Assembly: GCA_964199315.1 (NCBI GenBank)
Contig: OZ116702.1
Span: 26,474,001-26,538,000, forward strand
DNA length: 64,000 nt
Source of the DNA: Orbicella franksi
Lineage: Eukaryota
Direction of reading: 5' to 3'
The notes below the pieces were generated by a model. That model worked only from the letters and a program-made list of their open reading frames with translations, was not told the DNA's origin and made no database searches. How positions within the stretch are numbered: the first letter of the stretch is position 1; the number at the start of each line of letters is the position of its first letter. The translations under genes and the position numbers were made by a program. Positions 26,168-52,300 of the stretch are shown in pieces.

Positions 26168-26257
26168 GACAACAACAACAACAATAACAACAATAACAAC
26201 GAACAGCATCAGAAGCAACAACATCTTAATAACAGTAACAACAACAACAACAACAAC

Positions 26258-26292
<35 letters not shown>

Positions 26293-26310
26293 TAATAATA
26301 ATAAAACAGC
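26168..26310. repeat. Compound (AAC)n/(AAT)n microsatellite
   Basis: Directly visible; it generates the poly-N/T/I ORFs at 26036-26372. Confidence 0.95.
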
Positions 26311-26917
26311 AACAGAAGAAGCAGCCAAAACGTAACCTGGTGAACCAGCTAACAACAAAACCAATGAGTTAATACAAATCATCTTTATTTGTATTTTTGA
26401 AGTGAGAATTTTACATTCCTTTTGCGATAAAACGCATATGTTAATGATTACTTTGTATGTACATTGAAGCTCCTAACAAAAACAATAAGTTTGAAAAAGG
26501 CACATATGAGAAAAAACATTTTCATGCACACCGGTATAAACTACTATAACGTGAGCTATGAGCAACATTATGAATGAAAACACTGAGATCATATCCTTCA
26601 TAAAAAGACGGGAATGCAGCGAGTTTTGTTTTTAGAATATTAAAAACGAAGATTATTTAAATTAAACAAAAGAACTTTGACGTTCCACCAGATCGAAATT
26701 GGCAGTGTCTAAGTTACCAGACGTATGTCAGATAATAACTATCATTGCTGCGAGTCGAATCTGGAAGTGTAGCAGTTCCCGTAGGCTTGTAATTCCGTTT
26801 GGGGCTAAGTGCATCGTTTCTGCCTTCTGTTTTATTGTTCTTTCAAAGGGTATTGCGTCATTCGTGGGAGACCTTGCAAGAGCTGCTACCGACCGATCGA
26901 ATCTCAAAAAGAGGAAT

Positions 26918-28330
26918 TTAACGTCCAGGGGGCCCTGGGGGTCCGGGTGGTCCAGGAGGTCCTACACATCCGGGACATCCTTTGGGTCCATTTGGCCCTG
27001 GCAATCCACATATACCATCAAAACCGGGAGGTCCTGGGATTAACTGTGGTGTGGGAGCCGGAAACGGGGGAGGCGGCGGAGGTGGCGGAGGATACGGAGG
27101 AGGAAGACGGGAGGCGCAGCAGGAAAATATGCATCCCCTTTTACAAACGTTCGTGCAGCACTTCCTACAGCATGACCTAGAACAAGGCAGAGGGTTGCTT
27201 CTCAAGACTTTGTTAACTGAAATGATTGCAAAGAGAATATCTTTGTCAATTTGGTTGTTAAAAAGGTTACAAAATTGATAAAGTTGCAAGTTAAATCAGA
27301 TTAAGAATGTTAAAAGTCTAATTCACAATTATTTCACTCGCAGTTGCTGGATATGAGATGGTAGATAGCCAACGAGGCGCGTAGCGTTGAGTTGGCTATA
27401 ACTATCTCATATACAACAAACGCAAGTGGACTAATAGTTTTTATTAAAAACGCCCCCAAAATATTGAAAACGTAAGACGTACGTTTACCATATTTGTAGA
27501 GCGTGATATAATGGCTCATATACCATGATGGCTAAGCCAATGAAATCTCTTGAATTGCATTATCTAATGATCTAGTTTTTAATAAGCTTGATTATTTCGA
27601 GGAAGTTTAGACAGTTTTTTTTTTTCAATTGGCAACGGTTAACGTTGTGTCACCCAAATAATATAGCTTATCCACCACCAGTATTGTTTTTTTTTTCTAA
27701 AGTACTTGGCAAAAATTGACTACCACCTTTGGAGGGACATTTACCAACGTGGCTTATGTGCAAATGATACCAAAACCAATTAGTATGTTTCGACAGACTC
27801 TGTTAAAATGTTTAGCCCCTTAATATAGCTTAATATCATTCAAAACCTTGAATAATGATGGCACTTGTTATTAGTTTTCTTGCTTGTGCCAATCAACTAT
27901 AAACTAGCATTGTTTATATAGCTGGTGAGTGACAATTAATATGAATTATGACGCTGAGAAATGAAAGTGCATCATCACATTAGTTTTCTTAATAAACTTA
28001 AGGGGATCTTTCATTCATTTAAAAACAAATAGTTAAATACAAGTTTTTGCTCCGTAAAGCTCTTGATTTTTTTTATAGATTTTCAAAAGCTGGTTGAGTT
28101 ATTTATCATAAATGACAGGTATGATCGGGGAATCAGTAATAACGTGCTTGATTTTGCTGTCTTAGAAAGAAGAAAGATTAAATCAACTGACAGTAACATA
28201 GAACAAAAATTAGCTGTTAATATATTTTTCATTTGATGAAAAAGAACTTACCGAATTCTTCCATTGGTTTTCCATTAGCAACATAGATCACAGATATAAA
28301 CACCGCTAAGACTGCTATCTTAATGTCCAT
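26918..28330 (-). CDS. Gene E: minicollagen with 9-Cys basic N-terminal domain, 12 Gly-X-Y and no C-terminal CRD, 125 aa
   Basis: Exons 28330-28252 (MDIKIAVLAVFISVIYVANG-KPMEEF) and 27216-26918 (CSRSCCRKCCTNVCKRGCIFSCC, polyPro, [38 protein letters not shown]). AATAAA at 26831-26836. Confidence 0.85.
27334..27600. repeat. Interspersed hairpin-containing repeat in gene E intron
   Basis: Imperfect palindrome gatatgagat..atagccaac..gttggctata..atctcatat. It resembles a common coral repeat (recognition only). Confidence 0.5.
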
Positions 28331-30186
28331 TTTTATATACCTGTAAAAAAACCAAGATGGAACAATAGTTAATGCCAGTCATTTGGAAAAAGTTGTGACG
28401 GAACTAATTCACAAAAAAATGATCAGAATACCTTTTTTGGAAATTGATCAACTTTCACTGAATTGTGTGTTCAGCGAAAAGAAGTCGACTAACCGTCCTC
28501 AACTGCTTTGCATTGTTTAACCTGTCAGTGCAAATTGAGAAGTCTGACGCTATCTGTTGAACACCTCTGTGTATAAACATAACCGGTGTTTCATGGAATT
28601 TATAGCTTCAGTTTATAATATCGTTATACTCCCGAACGGCAATCCGCGGCTTGTTGCATTTATATCAGGAACTTCTAAGACATGCAAATGTAATGAACGT
28701 CTTTGAAGCCAAAGCCATCTGGTGTATTAAAAATTGGAATGTCGAAACTTTAGCGAACGGACTGAGTACTAGTCTCTGCATTTTCGTTCCCAGAGCCGTC
28801 TATGCTCCTCTTAGCCGATGGGGCCTAGGTGAGAGGAGAAGTTGGCTCTCGGGACATATGCCTTGGCTACTCTTGGATTCTTGGACTACGATTTTCACTG
28901 ATTCCATGTTGGTTTCCTTTTTGAGAATGTCACTGGTTGATATCAAAGACCAACTTAACACATAGATGAGATCATTACTACAGTCTGGATGTGTTTACCT
29001 TCCTCTTTAACAACAATTATAATACATTTCTCAACCTCCAACCTCTTTATTTCTATTAATCACTTTCGAGAGCGAATAATCTAATTGTTTTAGTAGAATT
29101 CTTACTAATTTTACTTCAAATAACGGTTTCCAATTATTTCTTGACGCATTATTAAACTTTGCGCCTGAAAAAGGTCGCTCAGACTGAATTGTCATTTAAA
29201 ATTGAAGTTGTGTGTGTCAAGAAACCGTAAATGCCCTTCATTTCGACTTTTCAGGAATGTAATTATCCATTTGCATCAAAATTCTCCTCCAAAACTTTGG
29301 AAAAACGAAAAGCACGTTGCCATTTCCTAGACGACCTCCAGCCACTGCACAGTAATGGCTGATATGGCTCAGCCAATCAGATTACAGCATTTGCATTAGA
29401 ATACTAGTAGAATTCTACTAATCTCCTTTATTGTTGTTATTATTTTTAGTTATTTTTTTGCATTACCTTGCGGTACATGCGGCTACATTGTAGTTTGTTG
29501 ATCCCTCAACATTAGTGCATACTCTAACATCTAACATCTAATATCTAACAGTTTGACCTATCTTTTTAGTTAATGTCATTTTGGTGATCAGTGACCATGT
29601 TAATTAAATTATTTTTTGGAAACTGATCTTGTAGAAACTTTTAATAACGAGATTTCCGGCTCAGTTCCTGTTGCCTTGGTCAGAATTAGCTAGAAACAGT
29701 GTCTCCGCATGTATAATCAGTTCTTATTTGCTGTGGTCCCAAGGGACGCTGCTAAAGGTAAATTAGCTTGCGGCAAGCGTATGTGTTCGTTAACGGAGGT
29801 GCGGTCTTTAAATACCTTTGATAAAATCTGTTATAAGCCGGTCTTTAAGCGCTGTAATCGAATGGTTTTAGTTAGAAATCAACCAGTGGATGCTTTCGAA
29901 ATGGAAATAAACGTTGAATTAGTGAAAATATTTGTCCAAAATATTAGCTAGTTAAATCATGTGTCTCCAGAGGCAGATTTTCTCTCTTGCCAAGGTCCCA
30001 CCTGCCAATAGAGACGTATTGACGCATTTAGGGGCGGGAAGGTGGTCTCAAGATTCTCATATTTAGCCACTGGAGGCATCTAGTCCCATTTTCAGTATTT
30101 CATGTCAACGTCGCCTAGCCTAGAAATGGGACCCACCAGTTTCACTCAAAATATGACATAAAAGCAGCCAAGGTTGTACCGTTTAT

Positions 30187-30472
30187 TAGCCTGCAATGCA
30201 GGCGTATTTTGGCAAGGAAGCGCATTTTGATTAAGCCAACGTCATCTTGGATTCATACTCGGTAGAGGCTCGGGGAAAGCCAAAAGGCGTCTTAGGAAGT
30301 AGGAGTAAGGTTGAAAGAGGAGTAGGGATTGGGAAGGGGAAGGTAAAATACCTATTGTCCCCCTCCCCTTCCCCGTCCACTTTTCCTAAGCCAACATGGT
30401 GGTGAATTTACTCGATTGCGAGCTAATACCGATAACTCGTGAACACACTGAAAACGCCTGCACTGCAGGGTA
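30187..30472. mobile_element. Non-autonomous TIR element (TAGCCTGCA.TGCAGGCGT termini)
   Basis: Left tagcctgcaatgcaggcgtattt; right aaaacgcctgcactgcagggta (inverted). The termini are similar to the start of the element at 7192. Confidence 0.65.
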
Positions 30473-32693: not shown

Positions 32694-34519
32694 TTACTTG
32701 CAGCAGGCGGGAGCAGGACAACATGGTGGTGGTGGTGGGGGTGGACAGGGGGCAGGGGCAGGAGCTCCAGGAGCTCCCTGGGGTCCAGCTGGTCCGGGAG
32801 GTCCGGGTGGTCCGGAGCATCCTGGGCATCCTTTGAGTCCAGGACATCCTGGTAGACCAGGGGCGCCGCCGCATCCCTTAGGTCCCATTGGTCCGGGTGC
32901 ACCGATTGGGCCGGGGAGGCCGGGTGGTCCTGGGAGACCGATGGGTCCAGTGCATCCCTTCCATCCGGGACATCCGGGAGATCCGGGTGGTCCGGAACAT
33001 CCTGGTGGTCCCATTGGTCCCATTGGTCCGGCAATCTGTTGCGTTGGTGGTGGAGGTGGTGGGGGAGGTGGACAACAAGGACAACAACGTTTGGAACCTG
33101 TAAGAAAATAAACTCCACAATTAGCTACGATTCGATCAAACATCATGTTAACTGAACGTTTTCCATGGGCCAGTAATCCATGTTGCAGAATAGTGATGAA
33201 CTATCATTTAATCTAACATCTTCCATCACGATGAAATATTCTATTTTTTAGTCCCCCACGCAATTACTATACGTTGTCGACGCTGTGGAATGATATTGAG
33301 CAGAAATGTTCCATTCGGATTCACAAGTTACTGTCTTGCGTAAATCTCGGAGAAAATGACTGATAAGACTTTACTCATTGAAAAACATTTAATAGTTCTA
33401 CAAAACATCTGAGAAAATATAGTGCTCCTTGAATGTTCGGATCAAAACTAGCTGAATATTATTCTTTTGAAAAATTAAGACAATAAAGTTTTCTAATCTA
33501 TAAAACAGTGGCCACCTGTTAAGTTTCATTGTTCTTGGACAGACATGTATCTTATTCCTTCACGCCTTGGTGCTTTGCTAGCAGAACAGCAAAAGGGCAG
33601 AGTTCTGTTGGCCTCATTAAATTCTTAAAACTTTTTTGCTCTTAAAACAGTCTTTTTGCAAAAGCGAGAGTCAAGTTGTGTAATTTTTTGGAAATATTAA
33701 GACATCGGAGTTTTCTAAACTATAAAACAGAAGCCACCTGTTCAGTTTTATTGTTCTTGGACAGACATTTGTCACATTCTTTCACGCTTTGGTCCTTTCA
33801 TAGAAGAGTAGTGAGAAAGACAGAGCTTTTTAGCCCACCTGGCTAAATTCTGGCTAAATTGGAATTTTTGTGCCTATACAGTTTTTTTTTTAAAGCGTGT
33901 GTCAGGTTATGTAAAAAATCAAGAAGAACTACCAATACTATTGATCCGTAATTACCACAAAGAAAATTGTTCGACTTAACCTTTAATTTCTGAGCTGTGG
34001 CCGGAAATGTCTGGTAACAATAACGCAAAAAACTTAAACTGATCAACAAACATTTAATAAACAGAACGAAAAAGAAAATATTTTTGAAAAATCGAGTACC
34101 TATTTTTTGGTTTACTTAGGTTCGATGACTTGATATTTCGCCACCGGCACAGCTTTGACAAAGATTTTTAGAAATTAACTCAGTTTGTCAAGAACTATGG
34201 GACATTTGTATTAAAACTGTTGAAATATGTCCTATCTAAAATAAGAACTTGAGCACACAACACTCGTACAGTTCCTTTTACATGCAGTGCCAAAAGTCGG
34301 TTGCTCTTATGATTGAAATAAACCAAACAATTGAAGATTGTTAACCGAAGAAATGTTTTTGATTATGACCCAAACAACACAGTTTTATTTTTCTAAAACG
34401 GATCAACATTTGACTTATTGATTTGATAAATAAACTACCAAAATCTTACCTTTTGTCGATCTAGCATGTGCGTAGCACACAAATGCAAGGACTAGGAGAA
34501 ATATTAATTTGGAATTCAT
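32694..34519 (-). CDS. Gene F: long minicollagen, 30 uninterrupted Gly-X-Y with 7 intra-helix Cys, reduced CRDs, 157 aa
   Basis: Exons 34519-34450 ([23 protein letters not shown]) and 33097-32694 ([10 protein letters not shown]9...[17 protein letters not shown]). 5'UTR donor GAG|GTGAGC at 34832/34831. AATAAA at 32642-32647. Confidence 0.92.
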
Positions 34520-37500
34520 CTTGCCTGTAAGAGAAAACAGAACGAAATTAGCTTCAGGAAATCTTTGGAAACTTAGGAACAAATTTATTGAACAATGTTT
34601 TGACGAGAAGAGTGATCAACACTTAGTGGTGTGGAAAATAGGGTAATCGCTCCAATTAAAGTCCACTAAAGATCATCGCGACAAGACAGATTTTGTTGAA
34701 AAACAAAATAATAATGTTATGGCTACCGATTAAGTAATATTTTGTCTAGGTCAAGGCAATTTTACATAACTTTCAAGCGAATTGATGGAAGACTATGGAT
34801 CAGGAACTCAAAAAGTAAAATGTTCGCTCACCTCTTTTCTCTGCCCTGACAGAATACAGTAAGATGTGACCTAGCTCTGCGAGACAGTAGTATTTACCAT
34901 GATGAAAGTAATTAATTTTAAATGCGTTTCTTTGCGGTGTTGGTCTGTGATTGGTCAGCAACCTCAGAAGAGGCAGGTGATGTCAGGTTGTTAAAACGCC
35001 CCTTTCTGTGCCACTGAACTGATAAGTAGTTTTGTGGGTCGTCCGAGACAAGCCCACTTACACGCTTGACTTGATGGCATTGTACGTTGTTTTTAGGATC
35101 TTTTATTTTTTTATAAAGTGCGGTTTCTGGTTTAGCTTGGAGGAATTTGAGTACGGTAAAACGTAAATGCTATAAATTTCAATGTGTGTTATATTAAAAA
35201 ATGTGCGTAATTGAGATGAAACCTCGAAAAGTGACTAAACCTTCCTTGAAGTACATTAAACCAGATTGGGTTATTTCGTGTTGATTCATGCATGTTTAAT
35301 ACACCTTATCTAATAAAACATCAAGGATCAGCAAATAACACTGACAATTCAAGGAAAACAAGCAGCTTAAATCAACAAATTCAGTAAACCAACTAAGAAA
35401 TTAATCAGAGGCAAAATATGAAGAGCGCACTGGGCAACGTCTATCAGTCGCTCATTTGCAAGAAAGACGAGTAAGGCAAAACCTGGATATAGATAACAGA
35501 CAGAGCTTGAAGCTTAAAGTGTCGGTGTTTTTGTTTTTCAACATCCTTAATGATTCTTGGCACTTTCAATTTCATGGTGACCTTAGGCTCCGTTTTTTTC
35601 TCTAAACCGGCTTGAAATGGCTTAATCTTCCAAACTGTATAAGATGAGATATTAAAATGTGTACAATAAAGATGTGTTATTGCATTAAAATTAGAATCAA
35701 AGCCACTTTGAAGTGTCCACGCCGAGCTAGCATAATTTACATGTCCCATCTTAAAGGTTCACTTCATTTAACTTCAGAGCTTGCTTGTTATTTCAATTTA
35801 GTGTTACTGGTTTTAGCACAAAAAGGAAATTCGAGTTATCCTATTGGTTTTAGTATTTTTCAACTTTCTGGTACTGATTTGATTAAATGTTTATTGTTTG
35901 TATAATACTTACGATTCACTGAGACAATCACTTCGTTTACTAGCACTGACATGTTTACTAAGACACATGAGCCCGGTGAAATAGTGTCTTCCAATCTAGA
36001 ATGAGAAACCCCGACAGCTTTTGGTCCTATCTTTTTTAATAAGAAAAGTAACTGTAAAAGCATTTCATAGGTGTTTCTATTGGTGATTCAACTGTCAAGG
36101 TATGAGTTGTTTTCGAATAAATTTTCTTTGTGTGAATATCATTGTTTTTTTCTTTATTTCATGGGTTTAGCATTACTTTGGTTTATTGTTAATTGCCGCT
36201 GAAACTTAAAAATGGTGCTTAATTTTCTGCTTTTCGAATGTTTAACGTAAACAAAATGCCAAAATAAATAAGAAATACTGCTGGTTTAGTCCGTGGCTTG
36301 GGTGCGATTTTAAAGTTAATATCGACCTCTTAAATTTGATATTATCATGAATAGTGTTGAGTAAAATTACCTCCGAAAATACCAGTACCTGAATCTTGGA
36401 GGACGATAAAAAAGAAACATGTCACTGAACTCAGTTTGCGTAAATGGGGTGATTACTGCACTGGGTTCAAGTAGCGTCTAGCGCTTGCACGTTACAACGC
36501 GCGTTGGCCGTCTTTAAGATGAAGTGTAACTTTTTTGTTTTAGTTATATACTCAGCCCTTCAAAGAGGCCTCAATGAGAACACAAACGTAGTTAACCTTT
36601 CTATTATGAACCTGATGCTAAGGTGAAATAATTTACCACGAAAATAATACCAGAGGTCGAGAAGGGTGAGTATAGACGAGGATCTCGCAGTGTTTTGTTG
36701 TTCGGTAGCGGAGTGGGGACTGGAGACCGAGAATCGATATCAGCGGAGGGATCAGACGGTGGGACGGTTACGTCGGGTTCGAAGGTTTACGGTAACAATA
36801 TGTCCGCAGACGTTTGATATATTTATTCCTTGCTTTCTAGTTTTGCTGTAAATTAAATTAGCATTAACGAATCTCAAATGAACGAAACTTAACTTAATTG
36901 CCCGCTGGTGGTTTTTCCAGCCAATTGGATGTGATCTAAACAAAACGAATCTCCTCAGTGAGTGTTAACTTTACTCATTTGTAATTGATACTTAATCGAT
37001 AGAGAGCAGAATATATCACCCGGAGGTCAAAGAAATTTCATTACCTTAAATGCTCTTTTCGAAGAAATTTTGAGGAGTTTGATATGTGGAATACTGGTTG
37101 CAACTAAGAGCCCACCGTATGCCTTCGATACCATCTCACCTAACTAAAACTAATTAACATGTTTTATAAAGTAGGAAGGCTTAAATTGAGGCAAATTTCC
37201 GTCGATTCTGCCGTATTTTTTGAAATTTAACCAATGTCTGTTCTATGTAGGGGAAAAAAAGAAACGTTTGTCTTTTGTTACTTAATATTAAAATCTTATG
37301 GGAAGAAACTGAAACACTTCTTGTCCTTTCTCGTAACTACTTGAGATGGGTTGAAAGTAACGTAAAGGTCTGGACTTATCGTTGACAATAAAGGAGGAAC
37401 AAACTTTGTATTTTCTGTTGGTTGACGTATTGTTCTTGAACAGACAGAACTAACGCCCACTCGACATTTCCAGAGCAGAAACAGTCTACACTCGACAGGT

Positions 37501-38859
37501 TCGGACAGGTTCTCCAGTGTCTTTATGAGTTTGTTCAAAGTTGTTTAACGACGAAAGACGGCTTCTTGTACTGGATAGTGAATTATAAGCTGACAACAGA
37601 GAATTTAGAAAAGGGTTTGATTATGGTGTACAATTAAACATGCAAGAGTAGGCGGTGCTCGAGTATCGTGAAAACAGAAAAGTGCTTCCATTCGTGTGTC
37701 TTCAGTACCCTTTGGTAACCATTACTCGGTGAAAAGCTTTAGGGGTGTATCTACTTTAAAATGAGAAGTTGCGGAAATTATCAGCGTTACCAAACAACAC
37801 GTCTTGGTTTGGAATTCTTTAAAACTAACAGCACTATACAGCGCACTATTTGTTCCAAACCACGAGAACCAATCCCGGCATAGAAACTCATTGTGATTGA
37901 TTTTAGAGCTTTAAAGAGAAACGATCTCAGTTAGGTGTTTTAAAAGCTTCACTGTAAATTTAGTTTTTGGCCAGTGACGCATTCAACGAAATGCACTGAT
38001 CAGTCAATATCGTTCATTTGGTACAACATACATGGTCATAAGCTTGGATTACAGGCGTTATTCACCATAGCCACTCCGATGGTTTTCCTTTAAAGTGTAT
38101 ATTAACCAAGTGATTTCTGAGGGGGCAGAGAAATATAACATCGTTAGACGAAGGATGACGTTTTTCACATGTATTGTGTGCTTTCAAAATTGCGGTAAAC
38201 AGTCACACAACAGGATAAGAATTCAAAACTGATAACCATTCCGCCGTACCTGTCTACTCGAGCATTATTTAGCACAGACTGATGAAATATTTGGGTAAGC
38301 TCATTTTCGGAGAATTGTGCTTTGATGCGTTCCTTCACTGGAAAAAAATCGTGACTAGTTTCCATTACAATATGAGAACTAGCATTTCATCCATGATCAA
38401 AAGGGTAGGGGAAAGATAAGTTTTCTTAACTTACGGATTGAAGATAAAAGGATCAAAGGAAAAACACCGGCTTGATTGAAATTTTGAAATTGTCAGTTCT
38501 TCCTGTCATTTTATTAAGTATGCAACATGCCATCACAAAGTAGATAAGATCGCAATATTTGGTGCTTTAGACTGTCCCTTTTGTAAAATAATAAGATCGA
38601 GTCCGACTAGTGACTAAAGCGTTTTGGCATAAAAACATTGATAAAGCCCATCGTTGGCGCTGCCGTCGGATTGGAAACGAAGAACTAAGAGAACACTATA
38701 AAATCTAAAGATTCCATGGACTGGTCAGCTTATAAAACGACTTCTGGCATGAGGCGAAATGAGAGTTGAGAATCGCAGAGCAAGATTGTCCGGCTGACCA
38801 GATAGAGAAAAACCCAAGCAGAAAAACGTTGTCATGAACTTGCCAACCCTAGATGAGCA

Positions 38860-39110
38860 CCTTATCATTTGTTATAAATAGTGATGCTGCGGGTTGACGT
38901 AGAGAGGACGTATAATGAATTAAACTACAGAGCTTTGTGGATGTGGTAATGGATGCCGGAACCGAAGATTCTGCTGGTCCAGTCTTGCTAGGGGGTCCAG
39001 GAAGTCCTGAGGTTCCAGGAGTGTCGGTGGATCCCATACTTTCGGCTAAACCTGACGAGTTAGGTTTGCCAGTTGTCTCATAAGTCCAGTGTTTCACCTG
39101 AATCCTCAAC
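38860..39110 (-). pseudogene. Decayed minicollagen remnant, copy 1
   Basis: Reads GKP NSS GLA ESM GST DTP GTS GLP GPP SKT GPA: the Gly-X-Y register is still visible with many Gly lost. I found no signal exon. Homologous to the remnant at 42.9-43.1 kb. Confidence 0.7.
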
Positions 39111-39380
39111 TGCACGACAGCTAATTACTTCATTTTTCCAGTGGGCTAGTTTTTCAAGGAGTTCAAAGAGGTCCCGAGAAGCACGAAAGGGGTAGAACAA
39201 CCCTGCAGTTTCGAAAATTGAAGGTGGCTCTAACCCCATCAGTAGAATTTTTCTAAAATTTACAGAACGTTATTCGCTAACGAGTTGATCACAATTCGAT
39301 AGTAAAACACTAATGGGCCGTAGTTAAGGTGTTTCTTTTCAACAGGCTCTATTGTTGCTATGCAGCTGTACGGTCTATTA

Positions 39381-39510
39381 TTATATGGCCAGTTCCGTGA
39401 GCGGGCAAGATGAACCAAATCCTGCGCTGTGATTGGTAGTCCCGAGCGGGCAAGATAGCTCCATCTTGCCCGCTCGGGATTACCCGCCGTGTCCCGCAAG
39501 AAAAATTTCC
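39381..39510. repeat. Interspersed repeat with a perfect 17-bp hairpin, between the two duplication copies
   Basis: tcccgagcgggcaagat (39440-39456), loop agctcc, atcttgcccgctcggga (39463-39479). Confidence 0.75.
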
Positions 39511-42500
39511 GCTAACGTTTGAAAATGTTATCTTTCATGCCAGAATGCGTCCTGTTCTATAAATTCAAATTCCAAATATTGTAACCCCATGCTAACGAAG
39601 AATAATGAAGGAAAAGTTAAACTATATTACTCATCTTTCAAACAGTTCAACAGTGGTGAATATGTCTGGGGATGGGCGCAGAGTTCCTGGCCAGGCTGTG
39701 AAAAAGGTTTCTGGGTCGTCCCAGACAAACCCACTTTATACGCTTGACTTGATGGCATTGCATGTTGTTTTTAGGATCTTTCAGTTTTTACAAAGCGAGG
39801 GTTCAGGTTTAGTTTGGAGGAATTTTGAGTACGCCAAAAGTTAAAAGCTATAAATTCCAATGCGACTCCTCTTAAAATTGTGGGTTGTCGGGATAAAAAC
39901 CCAAGAAGTAGCTAAGAAGTGAGTAGACCTTCGTGTAATAAGTACATTAAACCACTGTGGATTATTTTTGGGTCGATTCATGCATGTTAAATGAACTTTA
40001 CCTAATAAAACAACAAGGTTCAGCAAATAACACTAATAATTTCAGTAAAGCAAACAATTTGAATCAATGTGAGAACTGTACTAACTAAGAAATTAGTCAG
40101 TGACAAAATATGACGAGTACAGCGCTAGGTCCATCTGTCACTCAACTGCAGAAAAGGCGAATACTGCAATCTGTATATAGGAGTCAGGTAGAGCGTGAAG
40201 CATAAATGCCGGTGATGATGTTATTTTCAACATCCTCAGGTTATGATTCTTGTCATTTAGAATATTATGCTAACCAAAGGCTCCGGTTTTTTTTCTCCAA
40301 ACCGCCTTGAAAAGGCTTAATCAGCTCCAGACTGTAGAACATCAGATGTTAAATAAAGATGTGCTATATATTTTGAGTGTCAGTGCCAAGTTTATGGCAC
40401 TGATGCGACTATAAGATTGGCCCTGATTGTATAATTCTGATGGTATTTCTTACACTGGTATACTAGAACACGTGAGCTATTACATATATTTGTTAAAAAG
40501 CTCAGTAACTGCGAAAGTATTTCATGGGTGTTTCTATTGCTGATTCAACTGTCAAGGTATAAATTGTTTTAGTATATATCTTCCCTACGAGAAACACATT
40601 GTTTAATTTTATCACTTAGAATAATTTGATTTCTGGTGAATTGAACTTAATTAAACTTGAAAATTGTAATTTTCTGCTTTGCGAATGTTTAACACAAACA
40701 AAATGCTAAACTAAACCGGAAATCCTTCTGGTTTAGTCTGTGGCTTGGATGCAATTTTAAAAATTAATAACGATCTCTTAAATGAACTTTTTTAGTGAAA
40801 AAGGTTGAGTTAAATCACCTGCGAAACTTTTTGTCCTTGTTTTACCGCCCTTCAACGGGGCCTTGGAACACTTGGAATACCTATTCCAAACTGTATAACT
40901 TCGATACCTTTTAGGACCAATTAAAATGCCCAAGAAATTGGGAAGACTTTATATGCTGTCAATTTATATCTACTTTAGTTTCCCACTTATAGTGCCTAAA
41001 CGGATTTTCCCCGCTGTCCATTCTACCAGTCTTGCAAATTTCAAAGATACATATAATTTAGCCAAGGACTTGAAACTGTCCCACTCAAAAACAAAGAAAC
41101 GTTTGGCTTATAGTACTTTAATGTTCAAAACAGCAAACATATTCTGAACGTCTCGTCCCAATTCACTCGTACAGATTAATCTTATGGGAAGAAACTAAAA
41201 CACCTTTGGTCTTTCTCGTCATTTAGTGCGGGCCAGCATTGATTGTAAATACGCGACACAAGCTAAAACGTAAAGCTGTGAACTTAACGTTAACACGTTT
41301 CTTGCCCAACTGAGAAGGAAGAAACTTTGTATTTACCTTCCCTAGCGTTACCCTAACAAAGTGCACAGGAAAAATCTCTTTCTTCAGAAAGGTGCGCAAA
41401 GTCACTCTCCCGTGTCCCTAACGGGTGTGCCTACGATTACACCGAGATAAATACAGTGTAAAAAGTATGAGCGGAATCTATTTGGTTAATATTTTTTTGG
41501 GGGGGTAGAATTTTGGACAGGTTCAGACAGGTACTCTCGTCTTTTAATGTGTCTGCGAAAAAGCTCTCTGACTAGTTTTAACGACGAAAGACAGTTTCTT
41601 GTACGGGGTAGTATTTTATAAGCTGACGAGAGAGAATTTAGAAAAGGGTTTGAATTCTGGCGTCCAATTAATCACTCAACAGTACGTGGAGTACCGTGAA
41701 ATAAAAAAAATTCCTTCCATTTCTTGGTGAAAAGCCTTAAGGGTGTATTTTGCTTTAAAATGAGGCATTGGGGAAATTGGCTTGGATTTCTCTAAAACTA
41801 ACAGCACTAAGATTGGGTTTTCCAAAACAAGAAGGGAACCACAGTCAGCAGGGTGACTCTATGCGATTGATTTCCAAGCTTCAAAGAGAAACGGTATTAG
41901 TTAAGCGTTTTAAACGCTTTACTGTAAAATTTACTTTAACGCTATGGATGCAATTAGAGAAATTCTCTCATTTGGCACATCAACACATCGTTCATAAGGT
42001 TGGTTTTCAGGCGTTATTCACAATAGCTACCATAATGGTTTCCATGATTACCATGCGGTTTCTTATCTTATCCCTTTAGAACAAAAATTAGCCATGTGAT
42101 TTCTGAGGGAGCAAGCGATTTTAAAATCGGGAGATCTCAGCGAGAATAAGAATGACGTTTTTAATTCACAAGTATTTTATGCTTATGAAGTGGGTAAATA
42201 GTCAAATTACAGAGTAAGTATTCAAAACTGTTAAAAATTCCGTTGTACTTATCTATTATCTGATGGTCGAACATGATGGAATATTCTGGCAAGTCGATTT
42301 TCGGAGAATTTTTCCTTACTTACTCTGTTTTTCCCCTGGCAAACACCATAGCTAAATTGAATTATACTATGAAAATCAACATTTCAGTCATGATCAATAA
42401 GGTCCGTGTAAGAGGTAGGTTTTTCGCCTTACAGATTGAAGATCTAAAAAGGATAAACACCAGTCTATTAAAAAGTTGCAATTGTCAGTTCTTTATATCA

Positions 42501-42889
42501 TTTATTAAATATGTACCATGTCACAAAGTATAGATCAAATGATATCTCAAAATTTGGTTCTTTAGACTGTCCTTTTGTGCAAAACTGTAAGAGTGAGTCC
42601 GACTAGCTACTAAAGCGTTTTGCCATAAGCACATAAATGAGCTCATCGTCGATCATGTTGTCAGAAAGAAAACAAAAAACAAAGAGAACGCTATAAATAC
42701 GAACCTGCTATTAGATACCATGAACTGGTCAGCTCGGATAAAATCTTTGGCGAGAGGTGAAACAAGAACTGAGAATACCCAAGCGAGATTTTGTTTGCCA
42801 GAAAAAACAAAACAGAAAAACCCCGTCAGCGAGTTTTCACCCCTTGATGAGCACTCTGTGAGACGACATGGTCCCGTGATAAGTTGTAA

Positions 42890-43146
42890 CTAGTGATACT
42901 GCAGGTTGACGTAGTGAGGACGTGTAATGAATAATGCTACACTATTTTAGGGATGTGGTATTGGATGGTGGGACTAAATATTCTAGTGGTCCTGTTTTAC
43001 CAGGAGTCCAGGAAGTCCTGAGACTCCAGGAGTGTCGGTTGGTCCCACACTTTAGGGTCAAGCAGACAAGTCAAAGAGAGCGGGTTTCCCAGGTAGTCCC
43101 ATTGGTCCAGTGGTTCCAAATGGGACTACCTGGCAAACCTGCTCTC
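42890..43146 (-). pseudogene. Decayed minicollagen remnant, copy 2
   Basis: Minus strand reads [14 protein letters not shown](F)...stop, then GPT DTP GVS GLP, a frameshift, then GKT GPL. The GLPGKPAL motif matches genes G and H. Confidence 0.8.
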
Positions 43147-44068
43147 CCTCTTGTTGAGGTGTTTCTCTTTAACAGGCCATTGTTTGCTATGGTAGCTTTA
43201 TAGCATATTATGTCTTTCAAATGGCGATAAACTGTTGACCAATTACTTGGCCATCGTTTCAGATCACATTTGTAGTATCAAGTCATTAAGTTTACCAGTT
43301 TTGATCCAGCAAAGTATAAGTACTAGAAAGTTTAGGCAAATTTGTTTTCTCTATATTAAAATCGCCTAACAAAATGTATTTTTCCATCATTCACGTACGT
43401 CCTATTTATTGATCTGGTCAACCAATAAAGTCAGTTTAAAAAGGATCCTTTGTTGGCAAGGGCGATGTTAACAAAGGTAACTTAAAGATCAAGGAAGCAC
43501 CTGAGATGGCAGCAACATTTCTTAACGCTAGATATAAAGCGGGTCATGGGGAACTATACTGGGTATTTTTCACATTGAATACGCTTCCACTTTTGGTGTC
43601 AATTATCATGGAATACTTACACCTTATTTAACTTTCAACCTATTGCTGAACAACAAGGCTGCGTTTCTATGAGGTTCAAAGCGTTTTGAAGGTTAGCAGA
43701 AGACGAAAGCAGAAGAACATTTGGAGCGAAGAAATCCAACGAAATAGCTATTAAGAGGTAACAGGGCTCGCCATGTAGAGTTTTGTTCACAGTAGAGGTC
43801 GTATTCACTTTAATTTTCAGTTGTCAATTACTCTTTACAAATTACAAGAGGAATCCTCGTTTGCTGTTTTTTCCAATTCCGTTCACAGTTTCAACACAAT
43901 TTCTTGAACGTACCATATGAATATGCAGAAAATTTCGAGCATTCAACCAGTACTAAAATGCATGTGAAGCAGGGCACAGTCTCTTTTGTATGATTCTTTC
44001 ATTTCCTATCAAAAATATTTCAACTGAAACTTAAATTAGTTGTGCTTTTTCGATAGACGTTACGTGGT

Positions 44069-46274
44069 CTAGCCGCAGCAACTACCTCCGCAACCACCTC
44101 CGCTATTACATGGTGATACTTCAACTTGTGTTCCCGGAGGTCCAGCCGGTCCGGGAGGTCCCGGAGGTCCAGCAGGTCCAACAAGTCCAGGGGCTCCGGC
44201 AATTCCAGGGCACCCCTTAAGCCCAGGGCATCCGGGTGGGCCGGGAGGACCCATGCTTCCGGGTTGTCCAGGTGGGCCAGGAAGAGCAGGTTTTCCAGGA
44301 AGTCCGGGAGGTCCAGGTGGTCCAATTGCTCCGGGTTCTCCTTTGAAACCAGGAGATCCAGAAGCGCCAGGGGCTCCCATTTTTCCGGGTAATCCTGGTG
44401 CCCCAGGGGTAGCGGCTATTCCAGGAGGTCCTATCGGGCCGGGTAGTCCAACTGCTCCAGGTGATCCCTTGAGACCCATACACCCGGGAGGTCCAGCTGG
44501 CCCCATGCATCCGGCTTGTCCGGGTGGTCCAGGTGCGGCGGGTTTTCCAGCAGCTCCGAAAGGTCCTGGTGGTCCGAGTGGTCCGATTACCCCAGGGGGT
44601 CCCCTTAAACCAGGGCAGCCGGCTAATCCAATGGGACCTTGGCAACCAGGTGGCCCCGGGAGTCCAGGAGGCCCAGCTAGTGCTGGTGCTGGGACTGCAG
44701 GAGGTGGTGGGGATGGCGAACAGGGAGGGGAAGAGGGCGGACAGGGAGCAGAGTTACAACATGCTCTCCTGGTGACTGGAAAAATAGATTGACAGAACGG
44801 TCTTGTCATCAATGACAGAGTTAATAGAAGAATGAACATTAAAATGCAGTTTCGTCAGAGATACCGATTAAAACAAAAGTTTGTTACTTGTTTTAAGTCA
44901 GATGCCAGAAAAGTGGCAAGGCAAATGATGTACAGACATTTTGGATCCTCATTCTTTTCAAGTTTCACTAGCGTAATCAAAAAAGGGATTTCATTGTTTT
45001 TTTTTTTTTTATATATGTCTTTAAAATTGAGGAACAAATTTCAGTCTTAAAAATTAAAAAAAAAAAAGCAGAAGGAGGTTTCAGACTCAAACTCTGTTTG
45101 AGTAATTCGTGGAAACCTATAATTGATCTACAAAACCAGTTTTTTGAAAAAATATTCGTCCCTTAGAAGGTGTATTCTGGCCAGGTTTTCACATCAGTAA
45201 TAGTTTTCTAGTTTCTCATAGGAAAACTGCATTGTTCAATGACGAAATGACATTTCCATAACAAACAAACAAACAAACAAACAAACAAACAAACAAACGA
45301 GATCATTATGATTATATAGAAAGCCACTCTTCGAGTTTCCGCAAATGTATTATGTGGCCTATTGATATCTTCTGTGTTGTCTATAGTTATAAACCAATTT
45401 AAGGTGGCGTTAGCGAGTAGTTTATGGGAAAAGCTGCAGAAGATTGGAAGTTGTGGCACTAATATATTCTTAGAGCTCCTTAAAAGCTGCATTTCTATCT
45501 CAACCAATGTTAACATAGGGCATGTTTACAAGGAGAGAGGGTTACCCTAGCAAGGGGTTACCCTAGCAAGCGGGTTACCCTAGCAAGCGGGTTACCCTAG
45601 CAAGCGGGTTGCCCTAGCAAGCGGGTTACCCTAGTAAGCGGGTTACCCCAGCAAGCGGGTTACCCTAGCACTCACACATTTCCTCTGTTTTTTTTTTCGT
45701 CGTGTTTACAAGGCAGCTAGGGTTACCCGGGTGGACGGGTTACTCTATCTGCGTGCTAGGGCTACCCTGGCAGGCGGGTTAACACTCCAGGTAGGGTTAA
45801 CCCGCCTACCCGGGTTAACTTTCTAATTTTTTCCAGACCCTTTGAGTGTAACCGCGCATTAAGTTGTCCCGGATTGTAGGATTACCCTACCTGTGAAATT
45901 TTGCTCGTAAACAGGGGCTATCTTTCGCCCTCCAGTTAGGGTCAACCAGCTTGGTAGGGTAACCCTCCCTCCTTGTAAACAGGCCTATAGGTTCACTTTC
46001 GTTTTGAAATTTAACTTGAAAAAGTCACCATGACTAACTGACGACTAAATTATCTATGCTACTACTTTATCTCACATTATTGTATTCTTAAAATAGACCT
46101 CCTGGAGTCCGATTCAGATCGATCTGTTACGCTTTACTCATCAATAAAAACCATTAAACTTGGTGTAAAATAGTTGTGTAGTTGTGACAGTATGCACTTA
46201 CCAGTTTGTAGAGACCTGGCTGTCGTTGAAGCAACAAACACGACTACGAGACTCAGAAGAAATTGGATATTCAT
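44069..46274 (-). CDS. Gene G: very long minicollagen, 61 triplets with three Gly->Ala interruptions and 6 intra-helix Cys, 259 aa
   Basis: Exons 46274-46202 ([24 protein letters not shown], donor G|GTAAGT) and 44775-44069 ([12 protein letters not shown]...[18 protein letters not shown]). 5'UTR donor CAG|GTAAGC at 46733/46732. Confidence 0.92.
45518..45985. mobile_element. MITE (~30-bp TIRs, PIF/Harbinger-like ends) with internal 17-bp tandem array, in gene G intron
   Basis: Left ggcatgtttacaaggagagagggttaccct; right end reverse-complemented is ggcctgtttacaaggagggagggttaccct (2 mismatches). Eight units of gggttaccctagcaagc at 45539-45670. Confidence 0.85.
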
Positions 46275-49200: not shown

Positions 49201-49302
49201 GATTTCTCTAAAACAGAAAAATGGGTTTCATTTATCCTAAGCTTAAATTTGATCTGCTGCTTCAGCAGGTTTTGGTTGTCGCTCTGTTCCCTTTCAGCCC
49301 TT

Positions 49303-52300
49303 CTAACCGCAACAAGCAGGGGCTGCAGGTGGTCCGGGTGGTCCGGGAGGACCTGGGGGCCCAATAAGTCCTGGGGCGCCGTTAAGTCCGGGGCATCCCT
49401 TAAGACCGGGGCATCCGGCAGGTCCGAGTGGTCCCATAGGTCCTGGCGGTCCTGGTGGTCCAGGAAGGGCAGGTTTACCAGGAAGTCCAACTGGTCCGGG
49501 TGCTCCGACTGCCCCTGGGGGTCCCTTCCATCCGGGGCATCCAGTAGCTCCAGGTGGACCGGCGCAGCCAAGAGCTCCAGGAGGACCGGCTGGTCCAGGA
49601 GGTCCTGGTAGAGGTGCCGGAACAGGAGGAGGTGGTGGTGGTGGACAACACCGCTTGGAAGCTAAAAAGCACATTCAACAAATTGACGTCAGTTTTTTTT
49701 TATGCGTCTGTCCTCTTGTTGATGATAAATTGCGTCATAACATTGTCAAAGTGGCTGCGGAACCACGAGCCTGACATCAATTTGCGTTTTACCATAACAA
49801 GACCCCAAAATGGTGAAATGCCGGGAATAAATGAGGGGAAAGGACGCCGTAAACTTGCCGTAAACAGAGATAAGTAAATTTCATTCAAAATGAAGCGAAC
49901 ATTGTCAATAGCTTTTCTCACTTTTTGATTGGCTACTTAAAAAAGTCCATAGCATCTCATTGGTTAAAAAGTTGACAGTTTGACAGCTGCGAGTTGAACT
50001 AGAAAGCTTGCATAAATTACAATTTTATCCGCCTATACTTTTATTGATGATAAAAATGAGCCAATCAGTGAGCCAGAAATTAGACAGTTATTGTAAAAAT
50101 TCATTTAGATGACGCGCGTTTCCACAAACTCAAGGCGAGTCTAGCTATCAGTATTTTCCAGTTGTGCTGGTATATATTTTTATACTTAAACAGCTTCAGT
50201 CACCAATTGAAGCATAACACCAGCTGATGCTTAATAGCATCACGTAAATGTCAAAAGAAACGTAACGGTCTATGCCGTGTGAATTTCACAAGGCGTGGTC
50301 ATTATCTCACTATTGTGTTTCAGGCCCAACCTTTGTTGCATAAACGTTTAAGGGATCTAAACATCTGATTCGACTTTTCAACGTTTATATGTAAATTGTT
50401 TGTCTTAGAAAATGGGTTGGCTTGCAATGATTTTAAACGCGAACGGTTAACATTTGAATCACGATGTTTTATTATTTTCTGGAGCTCAATAGTAACGGTC
50501 AGTAATTGACGTTATCAGCCGAAATGTTACACGAAGGAAGAAAAGAAACCAACGTAATCACTCCGATTCTTATTACTTTTTACGCTAAGCGACTACGCCT
50601 TCTAGAAAATATTAGACCAATAACTAGTTATTTACAACTGAAAAATATCAGGTACCTGGCAACATTGGTCTTGAAATAAATAAAAAAATAAACAAGAACC
50701 AGCTTGTACTTTATTTTTTTCGCATGCCAGTGATTTGTTCTCACTTATTTCCAACCAGCAACTAGTTGAACAGACACCTAACGGCTTTTAGTATAAATCT
50801 ACTAGCGTTCTAATACGCATGCCGTTCTCTTATTGGCTAAGCTACTCACTATCTATTCTGTAATAGATAGTGAGTAGCGTAACAGTGTGCCCTTGATAAC
50901 GAAATGACGGCCGCTTCTTGGCGTTTTCGAAGTGTCTGTGAAGAGGATTTAGATAAAGTTTTGAACGATTAGTAGATTTATACTAAAACAATTAGATTAT
51001 TCGCTCTCGATTTCTATGCGCTATAGAAATCTCGAGCTCATAACCTGATTGTTTAATAGACTGTACAATTTTTTCCCAAGTATAAAACACTATCCAGCAA
51101 ACACAGCCGTCGAATCTTTATTAACTAAGGGACCACCCGTCCCATCAACACAACTGAAAGTGGTTGCTTCGGCGAGGTTCTACTATATTCGGTAAAGCCA
51201 TATGAGTTAAAAGGAAACGAAAAGTGGCTGGTTGATGTGAGGGAGTAAATATTTCGAACTCAAAACGCAACATCTAACAAACACTTAGCACTAGCAAAAT
51301 GGTCAGTTATTGCTAACAAAAACTACTATCTGAGCTTATCCTTTACATTTTGTTTTCGTTTACACTGTTGGAAGGATTCACAATAAACATGAAGTAATAA
51401 GACATCATAAGCCAGTGATGTATTGTAAACATGCTCTTTTCGTGGGGGTCCCATATTTCTTCAGGTCAAACAGAGGGTTATATAAAAAAAGTTACTTTAA
51501 AAAAGCCGTGGTTCATTTTTAGGCTGCCTGTATTTACTCACTAAAAATAATGTGAATAAATATGTTATTGCGTTTTTCATTACTTTTAATATTGTTTGTC
51601 AACCACAAGATTAATATTTGACAGTCAGAGGCCTCAGGCGACTGAGTGCGATAGATGGAATTCTACGTAAGAGCTAAGTTGTCGGATGAAAATTCTGCGC
51701 AAAACAGACTTCTTTTTGCCCTGACCTTAACTTATTACCATTCTGTCGTCGTATCGTTCCTACATGTATGTCCCGGTATGCAAAATTAGCCGCGTGAACT
51801 AACACCAGGGCCACACTTTCCTTGGAGTAACTGCTCAGCTTGTAAATGACGAGTCATGGAACAATAACATTCTACTTGCGGTTGTTCTACTTGTAGGAAT
51901 AAAACTGATCGTTCTTTTAAACCTTTGATATTTAGATAAGAACGAATACATGTGACCCTGTCAAGTTTAATTTTAAAAGTCTTTCAAAAGGACAATTCCT
52001 TCTGAGACTGTAGTCAATTATTTAGGAGAAAGGCTATTTCGAAATAAATCAATCTAGTAAAGAAACCGAACCGCACCATGAATAATTTCGCGTAGTTCAA
52101 GCGCAAGAAGCGTAAGTCTTTAAACAGTTTACACTTTATGCATTGCCGTTAAAAGTTACTTGTACTTTTGTTTTTGGCCTTTGTATGTTCCACTACTGAA
52201 ATTGCTTGTTATACCACGCGACATTAAATTATTTTAAAGTTATATTCCAACAACTTGCATCAAACAAATTCTGGGTCTACTATCAATACTAATACTAATT

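What the first reader, a model, noticed from the sequence alone, without database searches (positions are those of the whole stretch)
26918..49661. Minicollagens with cysteines inside the triple helix, on a ~14-triplet module in a 1x/2x/2x/4x series
Seen: genes E, F, H and G have 12, 30, 31 and 61 triplets. They share a module GCx-Gxx-Gxx-GCP-G[L/W/F/P][K/R]-G[C/P/S/E]P. The GxK/R triplet falls at positions 8/22 (F), 9/23 (H) and 8/23/37/51 (G), a period of 14 (once 15). Intra-helix Cys number 3, 7, 4 and 6, nearly all in the X position. Their terminal CRDs are cut to CC or CCxCC, or are missing at one end. Established: canonical minicollagens such as Hydra Ncol-1 have ~14 triplets and polymerise through 6-Cys CxxxCxxxCxxxCxxxCC end domains, and X-position side chains face outward from the helix. 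Inference: this subfamily moved its cross-linking chemistry from the ends to the rod, giving side-by-side disulfide-stitched fibrils with lengths quantised in ancestral 14-triplet units. That would be a different assembly mode, possibly for anthozoan tubules or spirocyst threads. Related anthozoan sequences may already be deposited, so novelty is unverified.
Basis: partly seen in the sequence, partly recalled or inferred. Interest (0 to 1): 0.85.

Follow-up and report, generated by a model that had tools for sequence, protein, structure and literature searches.

The report
Coral NvNcol-6-type minicollagen gene cluster
Four neighbouring coral genes encode stinging-capsule minicollagens with conserved cysteines inside the collagen rod and lengths built from about 14-triplet units, but this protein type is already deposited for the sea anemone Nematostella (NvNcol-6, NvNcol-1, NvNCol-7), so they are new family members, not a new kind.

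Summary
Four two-exon genes on the minus strand encode secreted collagens with 12, 30, 31 and 61 triplets. They carry 3, 7, 4 and 6 cysteines in the helix, 19 of 20 in the X position. All share the motif GCx-Gxx-Gxx-GCP-Gx[K/R]-G, recurring every 14 triplets. DNA periodicity is significant in G (z=4.6) and weak in F and H.

The genes are real. Signal-peptide exons and splice sites are conserved in other corals, dN/dS is 0.05-0.24, no helix Cys varies, and F exon 2 is held whole in many RNA libraries.

The kind is not new. A published alignment (Shpirer 2014) holds Nematostella Ncol-6. It has the same two modules, a non-Gly junction triplet, the string [10 protein letters not shown], and 5 of 5 X-Cys aligned with F without gaps. 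NvNcol-1, Acropora Ncol-1 and Polypodium Ncol-9 have helix Cys together with full CRDs. So rod cysteines are ancestral, and the loss of CRDs is the derived step. NvNCol-7 (eLife 2025) already shows multi-block rods with alanine breaks.

NvNcol6 is nematocyte-specific, not spirocyte-specific. Lateral disulfide stitching is geometrically plausible but untested. The scan noted G's Ala kinks on this same window (s1-237937), and nothing on other DNA.

The parts
28252..28330 (-). Gene E exon 1: signal peptide plus start of propeptide, phase-1 GTAAGT donor
   Evidence: Conserved with an intact ATG and donor in another coral (L010).
26918..27216 (-). Gene E exon 2: 9-Cys CRD-like N-domain, polyproline, 12 triplets (helix 26927-27034), ends GR-stop with no C-terminal domain
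   Evidence: Orthologues L004/L010 have dS 0.32 and dN 0.016 and the same stop.
34450..34519 (-). Gene F exon 1: signal peptide, phase-1 donor
   Evidence: Conserved in L008 and partly in L003.
32694..33097 (-). Gene F exon 2: KR, CCPCC, polyP, 30 uninterrupted triplets (helix 32760-33029) with 7 X-Cys, polyP and a Cys-Pro C-terminus
   Evidence: Orthologues reach dS 0.73 with 7/7 helix Cys kept. It aligns without gaps with NvNcol-6 (hand count). All sampled words are held in 14 or more runs listed as RNA, some only guessed to be RNA.
46202..46274 (-). Gene G exon 1: signal peptide, phase-1 GTAAGT donor
   Evidence: Conserved in L014.
44069..44775 (-). Gene G exon 2: RR, 4-Cys N-end, 61 triplets (helix 44126-44674) arranged as 15 + AAP + 13 + ATP + 13 + ALP + 17, 6 X-Cys, 4-Cys C-end
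   Evidence: DNA period of 14 triplets, z=4.6. Repeat copies spaced 126/126/135 nt. Orthologue L014 keeps all Cys and all three Ala triplets.
52308..52377 (-). Gene H exon 1: signal peptide, phase-1 donor (outside the finding's coordinates)
49303..49661 (-). Gene H exon 2: KR, CC, polyP, 15 triplets + ALP + 15 triplets (helix 49327-49605), 4 X-Cys, C-terminal ACCG
   Evidence: A polyA RNA contig covers 49283-49663 and then departs from the genome at the predicted acceptor (record 15). Orthologue L012 at dS 0.75 keeps 4/4 Cys and the Ala triplet.
38849..39115 (-). Decayed collagen-like fragment inside a duplicated ~4 kb unit between F and G
   Evidence: (D4-D10).
42934..43203 (-). Second copy of the decayed fragment; it reads [11 protein letters not shown] and is then broken, resembling the G/H module junction

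Best explanation
E, F, G and H are functional, tandemly duplicated scleractinian members of the Cys-in-helix minicollagen lineage. Its published Nematostella representative is NvNcol-6, and F is most likely its orthologue.

Each gene has two exons. Exon 1 encodes the signal peptide. Exon 2 starts just before a dibasic propeptide cleavage site. In F and H the mature chain then starts with CC, and in G with ACC. No dibasic site precedes the first Cys of E, so its cleavage site is unclear. The chain continues through polyproline into a collagen rod.

The rods are built from one, two, two and four copies of an old ~14-triplet module. They would be about 10, 26, 27 and 52 nm long. G arose by internal duplication of the junction-bearing module of an H-like two-module gene.

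Each module carries a conserved thiol cluster, with GCx at -4, GCP at -1, a hydrophobic residue plus Lys/Arg at 0, and often GCP at +1.

Inferred mechanism: equivalent X-position Cys of one trimer are too far apart to bond to each other. These thiols therefore point outward and form inter-molecular disulfides during capsule maturation. The partners would be neighbouring rods or CRD-bearing wall proteins. The neighbouring basic residue would help by favouring the thiolate. The reduced CC ends give only limited end-to-end linking.

What is shown: gene structure, selection, module homology, Cys conservation back to Nematostella, and transcription. What is inferred: trimer formation, disulfide partners, and location in the capsule.
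For: - Gene models share a phase-1 intron and signal peptides, and exon 1 is conserved in other corals.
- The four genes sit in a tandem cluster with a canonical-CRD minicollagen and CRD-only genes.
- Purifying selection: dN/dS is 0.05-0.24, with dS up to 0.75. No helix Cys varies (0 of the 21 Cys scored, one of them a terminal Cys of H), against 54 of 262 other X/Y positions (Fisher p=0.01). Ten of the 21 Cys codons show TGT/TGC synonymous changes.
- Module periodicity is seen.
- NvNcol-6 in the published alignment has the same motif twice, anchors 14 triplets apart, a non-Gly junction triplet and the string [10 protein letters not shown]. Aligned without gaps to F it gives 61/84 identities, and 5/5 X-Cys fall on F Cys (hand count).
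- Helix Cys also occur in NvNcol-1, Acropora Ncol-1 and Polypodium Ncol-9.
- Idealised 7/2 and 10/3 helix geometry puts equivalent X C-beta atoms at least 6.2 A apart. In the 7/2 model 14 triplets equal two superhelix turns, so the clusters keep their azimuth.
- Transcription: all sampled words of F exon 2 are held in 14 or more runs listed as RNA (some only guessed to be RNA), including libraries of 4-6 million letters. An H contig stops at the predicted acceptor.
Against: - There is no direct evidence on disulfide state, trimerisation or subcellular location.
- No cell-type expression data exist for this coral.
- Three word-indexed searches and one exhaustive protein search returned only generic collagens. 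Deep orthology therefore rests on one published alignment and a hand comparison.
- Splicing of G is not shown, because RNA contigs run into its intron.
- The geometric argument uses idealised helices and an assumed radius range. It ignores heterotrimers and local unwinding at the Ala breaks.
- E has one Y-position Cys, and NvNcol-6 has a GCP-GPC pair that could bond differently.
Confidence: 0.6

Rival explanations
1. The helix cysteines are intra-trimer staples. With the C-terminal CRD reduced (in Hydra it acts as a cystine knot for the trimer), Cys inside the rod would lock the three chains of one molecule in register rather than link molecules side by side.
For: Tursch 2016 shows that the C-CRD works as a trimer knot, and that knot is missing or reduced here. 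Closely spaced Cys flank the anchor (GCP-GxK-GCP). NvNcol-6 has adjacent X and Y Cys (GCP-GPC), and E has a Y-Cys.
Against: 19 of 20 Cys are at X. In idealised helices, equivalent X C-beta atoms are at least 6.2 A apart for any plausible radius, beyond the disulfide range. NvNcol-1 and Acropora Ncol-1 have the same helix Cys although they keep full CRDs.
Confidence: 0.12
2. One reading: this subfamily builds anthozoan spirocyst threads or tubules rather than nematocyst structures.
For: In Nematostella the genes next to NvNcol6 (NvNCol-like 3 and 4, NvNcol0; NV2.11816, 11818, 11820) have incomplete minicollagen features and are reported in spirocytes. E, G and H could be their counterparts.
Against: The only sequence-verified relative, NvNcol-6 (NV2.11815), is reported as a nematocyte-specific, mid-to-late marker that is never co-expressed with the spirocyte marker NvNcol5. 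NvNcol-1, also rich in helix Cys, is absent from spirocysts. The NvNCol-like sequences could not be obtained.
Confidence: 0.25
3. The helix thiols mainly serve another chemistry. They could stay reduced as a redox buffer, bind metal, or act together with a hydroxylated or oxidised Lys at the conserved Gly-X-Lys-Gly site, without forming disulfide networks.
For: A Lys/Arg at Y sits at every anchor. X-Lys-Gly is the classical lysyl hydroxylase context (established collagen biochemistry).
Against: The anchor is Arg in G module 1, so Lys-specific chemistry is not universal. Minicollagen polymerisation is known to run through disulfide reshuffling.
Confidence: 0.08
4. Some or all of the four are decaying duplicates without function.
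For: Decayed collagen fragments lie between F and G. E lacks any C-terminal domain.
Against: All four ORFs are intact, with conserved signal exons and splice sites. dN/dS is 0.05-0.24 in several coral species, and E's truncated end is conserved at dS 0.32.
Confidence: 0.02

Closest known systems
Nematostella vectensis minicollagen Ncol-6 (DAA34995; gene NV2.11815)
   Same: - CC directly after the KR cleavage site, and Cys-Pro-rich ends instead of canonical CRDs.
- Two ~14-triplet modules, each with GCx-Gxx-Gxx-GCP-GxK.
- Anchors 14 triplets apart, and a non-Gly triplet at the module junction.
- The identical string [10 protein letters not shown].
- 61/84 ungapped identity to F, with all five X-Cys aligned.
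   Different: - NvNcol-6 has long (CPxP)n arrays at both ends, whereas F has only CCPCC and a short Cys-Pro tail.
- Its junction triplet is PRP. F has none, and H and G have Ala triplets.
- The coral has four paralogues, with 1, 2, 2 and 4 modules.
Nematostella NvNCol-7 (NV2.11814; eLife 2025, PMC12549020)
   Same: It has a minicollagen propeptide and a rod made of many blocks of 12 or 15 triplets separated by a single alanine or a degenerate triplet. It is the gene next to NvNcol6, as G is near F.
   Different: It has about 25 blocks and ~1000 residues, with canonical N- and C-CRDs. G has 4 blocks and reduced ends.
NvNcol-1, Acropora Ncol-1 and Polypodium Ncol-9 (Shpirer 2014 alignment)
   Same: X-position Cys inside a ~15-triplet helix, including the GCx-Gxx-Gxx-GCx pair. 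NvNcol-1 shares the 0/+3/+5 spacing of F module 1.
   Different: They keep complete N-CRDs and single or double C-CRDs, have a single module, and lack the Gx[K/R] anchor flanked by GCP on both sides.
Hydra minicollagen-1 (canonical minicollagen)
   Same: Signal peptide, propeptide, polyproline, a short collagen rod, and disulfide-based polymerisation in the cnidocyst wall.
   Different: It has 12-16 triplets without Cys, and polymerises through CX3CX3CX3CX3CC domains at both ends. None of E-H has that pattern.
NvNcol-4, NvNcol-5 and Metridium Ncol-4
   Same: Doubled rods (~27 triplets) with a one-residue alanine imperfection at the midpoint.
   Different: No helix Cys, and canonical CRDs at both ends.

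Membership tests
Minicollagen (David 2008 / Tursch 2016 definition) | N-terminal signal peptide followed by a short propeptide ending in a dibasic (KR) site | tested here: met
   Exon 1 encodes hydrophobic signal peptides. KR (F, H) or RR (G) sits just before the first Cys. E has no dibasic site before its first Cys, so its cleavage site is unclear.
Minicollagen (David 2008 / Tursch 2016 definition) | Short central Gly-X-Y domain of 12-16 repeats | tested here: inconclusive
   E has 12 triplets, which meets the criterion. F, H and G have 30, 31 and 61, which exceed it but are multiples of the unit. Accepted Nematostella minicollagens already reach 27-28.
Minicollagen (David 2008 / Tursch 2016 definition) | Polyproline stretches flanking the helix | tested here: met
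   All four have N-side polyproline. Only F has it on the C-side.
Minicollagen (David 2008 / Tursch 2016 definition) | N- and C-terminal CRDs with the pattern CX3CX3CX3CX3CC | tested here: not met
   A pattern scan finds canonical CRDs only in the neighbouring genes at 23762-23815 and 11540-11839, and none in E-H. E has a variant 9-Cys N-block, and the others have CC, CCxCC or 4-Cys ends. A PDB sequence search with E's N-block found nothing.
Minicollagen (David 2008 / Tursch 2016 definition) | Cnidocyte-restricted expression | not testable with these tools
   Only presence in bulk coral RNA libraries could be shown.
Minicollagen (David 2008 / Tursch 2016 definition) | Tandem genomic clustering with other minicollagen or CRD genes | tested here: met
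   All eight collagen or CRD genes lie on the minus strand of one window. The E-F and G-H order is kept in contigs L004/L010, L007 and L014; L004/L010 and L014 come from other corals, while L007 is identical to the window.
NvNcol-6-type minicollagen | Module motif GCx-Gxx-Gxx-GCP-Gx[K/R]-G repeated with anchors 14 triplets apart | tested here: met
   F 8/22, H 9/23 and G 8/23/37/51, against NvNcol-6 7/21. E has one partial copy.
NvNcol-6-type minicollagen | CC immediately after the propeptide site, and Cys-Pro ends instead of canonical CRDs | tested here: met
   F has KR-CCPCC, H has KR-CC and G has RR-ACC. NvNcol-6 has KRQCCPVPCP.
NvNcol-6-type minicollagen | Single non-Gly triplet at the module junction | tested here: inconclusive
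   Present in H (ALP) and G (AAP, ATP, ALP). Absent in F, which is otherwise the closest to NvNcol-6 (PRP).
NvNcol-6-type minicollagen | Orthology shown by tree and synteny with NV2.11815 | not tested
The protein searches returned only generic collagens.
NvNCol-7-type multi-block minicollagen | Many blocks of 12-15 triplets separated by a single Ala or a degenerate triplet, plus canonical N- and C-CRDs | tested here: inconclusive
   G has 4 blocks of 13-17 triplets separated by Ala triplets, so the block feature is met. It lacks canonical CRDs and is about 6 times shorter.

The most novel reading that the evidence does not exclude
The conserved thiol cluster GCx-Gxx-Gxx-GCP-Gx[K/R]-GCP could be a dedicated lateral cross-linking node. 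It recurs every 14 triplets, which is two turns of a proline-rich 7/2 triple helix, so successive nodes keep the same azimuth. Rods of 1, 2 and 4 modules could then be stitched side by side in register into sheets or bundles. That would be a second polymerisation mode of the cnidocyst wall or tubule, separate from the end-to-end CRD network. It would have been overlooked in NvNcol-1 and NvNcol-6 since their deposition.
Probability: 0.3. Interest if true: 0.65.

Novelty: new member of a known kind. Interest (0 to 1): 0.4.

Why it matters
Minicollagens are the load-bearing polymer of the cnidarian stinging capsule, and current models place all cross-linking in the terminal CRDs. This work shows that a helix-borne Cys pattern is under purifying selection in corals. 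The pattern is shared position for position with Nematostella Ncol-6, and its core pair is shared with Ncol-1-type proteins and Polypodium. None of the papers I could read comments on it.

That gives a concrete, testable question about a second cross-linking mode. It also gives a natural length series (1, 2, 2 and 4 modules) with which to test it. For genome annotation, it flags four real coral genes for which three word-indexed searches and one exhaustive protein search returned no homologue.

Tried and rejected
1. The search for homologous proteins with F, with G and with F's C-terminal half, and the exhaustive representative search with F, returned only generic collagens. No cnidarian orthologue appeared. 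I read this as swamping and poor annotation, not absence, because a degenerate DNA pattern for [10 protein letters not shown] found 13 coral-derived contigs in metagenomes.
2. ESM Atlas searches gave only generic collagen or unnamed clusters.
3. Pfam gives only PF01391.
4. PDB sequence searches gave nothing for E's N-domain and only generic collagens for F.
5. Rfam found nothing in 26-53 kb.
6. Read laying supported the H acceptor but not G's splice. Two polyA raw-read runs had almost no reads.
7. Supplements of the eLife 2025 and Kyslik 2021 papers hold no full sequences of NvNCol-like 3/4, Ncol0 or NCol-7.
8. A hidden third exon giving E a C-terminal CRD was considered and rejected. The stop context CGTTAA is a poor donor, and no Cys/Pro-rich ORF lies downstream.
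9. Pseudogene status was rejected on dN/dS.
10. I did not type the NvNcol-6 sequence into a tool, so the F/NvNcol-6 identity is a hand count.
Full report
**What is there**

The window carries a minus-strand cluster of cnidocyst structural genes. A six-frame scan for Gly-X-Y runs and CRD patterns finds:
- the four genes of the finding;
- a canonical-CRD minicollagen at about 23.6-23.8 kb;
- a collagen exon at 20.6 kb;
- a CRD-only gene at 11.5-11.8 kb.

Each of E, F, G and H has the same two-exon structure. A 70-79 nt first exon encodes a hydrophobic signal peptide and ends in a phase-1 GT donor. The second exon opens at a polypyrimidine-AG acceptor, 2-3 codons before a dibasic site in F, G and H (KR in F and H, RR in G). 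E has no dibasic site before its first Cys. The spliced ORFs are 125, 157, 259 and 142 residues.

**Check of the observation**

- Triplets: 12, 30, 31 and 61.
- Helix Cys: 3, 7, 4 and 6, with 19 of 20 at X.
- Gx[K/R] anchors: 8/22 (F), 9/23 (H) and 8/23/37/51 (G).

When modules are lined up on the anchor, the motif is GCx at -4, GCP at -1, [L/W/F/P][K/R] at 0, and G[C/P/S/E]P at +1.

The counts of 31 and 61 include Ala-for-Gly triplets: H triplet 16, and G triplets 16, 30 and 44, an exact period of 14. The scan noted these kinks separately on this same window (s1-237937).

The Cys density is not a collagen commonplace. In the 209 collagens pulled out by my searches, Cys made up 0-0.5% of Gly-X-Y residues in most and at most 1.3% (a single Cys) in any. 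Here it is 3.3-8.3%.

**DNA periodicity**

- In G, self-identity at a shift of 14 triplets is 0.61 against 0.516 for shuffled triplet order (z=4.6). At 28 triplets z=3.5.
- In F and H the same shift reaches only z of about 1.4-2.0.
- The repeat finder independently places in-register copies 126 nt apart in F, and 126, 126 and 135 nt apart in G.
- Module-to-module DNA identity is 0.55-0.75, and third-position identity is about 0.3-0.6. The duplications are therefore old.
- H's first and last modules match G's first-type and last modules; G_B-H_B shows 0.75 DNA and 0.81 protein identity. G's three junction-bearing modules resemble each other and H's first module.
- G is best read as an H-like gene that gained two internal modules.

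**Are the genes real?**

A degenerate DNA pattern for [10 protein letters not shown] found 14 metagenome contigs. Thirteen of them are coral host DNA carrying orthologues of E, F, G or H, often in the same order.

- Pairwise dS reaches 0.73-0.75 for F and H orthologues, with dN/dS of 0.05-0.24.
- None of the 21 Cys scored varies (20 helix Cys plus one terminal Cys of H caught by the pattern), against 54 of 262 other X/Y positions (Fisher p=0.01).
- Ten of the 21 Cys codons switch between TGT and TGC.
- The Ala triplets, E's abrupt GR-stop end, and the signal-peptide exons with their donors are conserved too.
- All sampled words of F exon 2 are held in 14 or more runs listed as RNA (some only guessed to be RNA), including libraries of only 4-6 million letters. 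That points to an abundant transcript.
- A polyA RNA contig covers H exon 2 and leaves the genome at the predicted acceptor.
- G is present in RNA libraries, but contigs run into its intron, so its splice is not shown.

**Comparison with what is known**

Protein database searches were swamped by generic collagens. The published minicollagen alignment of Shpirer et al. 2014 (PMC4195985, Additional file 3) settles the matter.

*Nematostella Ncol-6 (DAA34995):*
- It reads KRQCC, a Cys-Pro array, polyproline, then 28 triplets.
- Cys are at X in triplets 3, 6, 17, 20 and 22, and at Y in triplet 23.
- Lys anchors are at triplets 7 and 21, which is 14 apart.
- Triplet 14 is a non-Gly PRP.
- It contains the exact string [10 protein letters not shown].
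- Laid without gaps on F (triplet i on F triplet i+1), it gives 61 of 84 identical residues by my hand count. All five X-Cys fall on Cys of F.

*Other published minicollagens:*
- NvNcol-1 has Cys at X in triplets 3, 6, 8 and 13 of 15, the same 0/+3/+5 spacing as F module 1.
- The two Acropora Ncol-1 sequences have four helix Cys each.
- Polypodium Ncol-9 has the 0/+3 pair.
- All of these keep complete CRDs.
- Several Hydra minicollagens have single helix Cys.

Helix cysteines are thus an old feature of one minicollagen lineage. What is derived in NvNcol-6 and in E-H is the erosion of the terminal CRDs and the multiplication of modules.

*Doubled and multi-block rods are also published:*
- NvNcol-4 and NvNcol-5 have about 27 triplets with a mid-rod alanine.
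- NvNCol-7, the gene next to NvNcol6, has about 25 blocks of 12 or 15 triplets separated by a single alanine or a degenerate triplet.

**Cell type**

NvNcol6 is reported as nematocyte-specific and mid-to-late in cnidogenesis, and is never co-expressed with the spirocyte marker NvNcol5. NvNcol-1 is absent from spirocysts.

The Nematostella neighbours of NvNcol6 (NvNCol-like 3 and 4, and NvNcol0) have incomplete minicollagen features and are reported in spirocytes. I could not obtain their sequences. Spirocyte expression of E, G or H therefore remains open.

**Mechanism**

Shown: secreted, selected, modular collagen chains with conserved outward-position thiols.

Inferred from idealised 7/2 and 10/3 triple-helix geometry:
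- Equivalent X C-beta atoms of one trimer are at least 6.2 A apart for any plausible radius, which is too far for a disulfide.
- The thiols must therefore stay free or bond to other molecules.
- In the 7/2 model, which is typical of proline-rich helices, 14 triplets equal two superhelix turns. Successive clusters then keep the same azimuth every 12 nm.
- The invariant basic residue beside the Cys would favour the thiolate.

I therefore favour inter-molecular disulfide nodes along the rod, linking to like rods or to CRD-bearing wall proteins, with the CC ends giving limited end linking. The intra-trimer staple model is the main rival.

**Verdict**

They are new coral members of an already deposited minicollagen type, and the quantised-length idea has a published precedent. 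What none of the papers I could read mentions is the position-for-position conservation of the helix Cys cluster, which is worth a bench test.

Noticed in passing
window 35274-39060 and 39966-43071: A ~4 kb segmental duplication (79-88% identity) lies between F and G. Each copy holds a decayed collagen-like fragment. One reads [11 protein letters not shown] before breaking, like the G/H module junction. These look like relics of further minicollagen genes, which suggests birth-and-death turnover in the cluster.
   Followed up: partly
L006:409-897 (-): In one ENA coral metagenome contig, an F-type N-terminus and helix run in frame into the C-terminal tail of the window's gene at 20619-20735 (ending [11 protein letters not shown]). 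This is either a recombinant paralogue or an assembly chimera through the shared GPPGPPG repeats.
   Followed up: no
window 20619-20735 (-): A 13-triplet collagen exon with a short CC tail and no Cys in the helix. Its upstream exon or exons were not identified.
   Followed up: no
window 23564-23815 (-): A minicollagen with a canonical N-CRD (CX3CX3CX3CX3CC) and a 13-triplet helix that starts IYG-x-AG, like Metridium Ncol-2 in the published alignment. Its C-terminus has only CC.
   Followed up: no
window 49630: RNA contigs from two runs carry an extra GGT here. That is one more proline in H's polyproline tract, so it is a length polymorphism.
   Followed up: no
window 45476-46066 and 49698-49757: Stretches inside the G and H introns have very high depth in RNA contigs (about 250-3000, against about 5 in the exons). 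They are probably expressed repeat elements. There is no Rfam match.
   Followed up: partly
window 26050-26380: A long AAC/AAT microsatellite lies between gene E and the next gene downstream. It produces spurious poly-N, poly-I and poly-C ORFs.
   Followed up: no
L012:725-1147 (-): The most diverged H orthologue (dS 0.75) has its Ala triplet at position 15 instead of 16. It still keeps the two Lys anchors exactly 14 triplets apart, so the anchor spacing looks more constrained than the position of the junction.
   Followed up: partly
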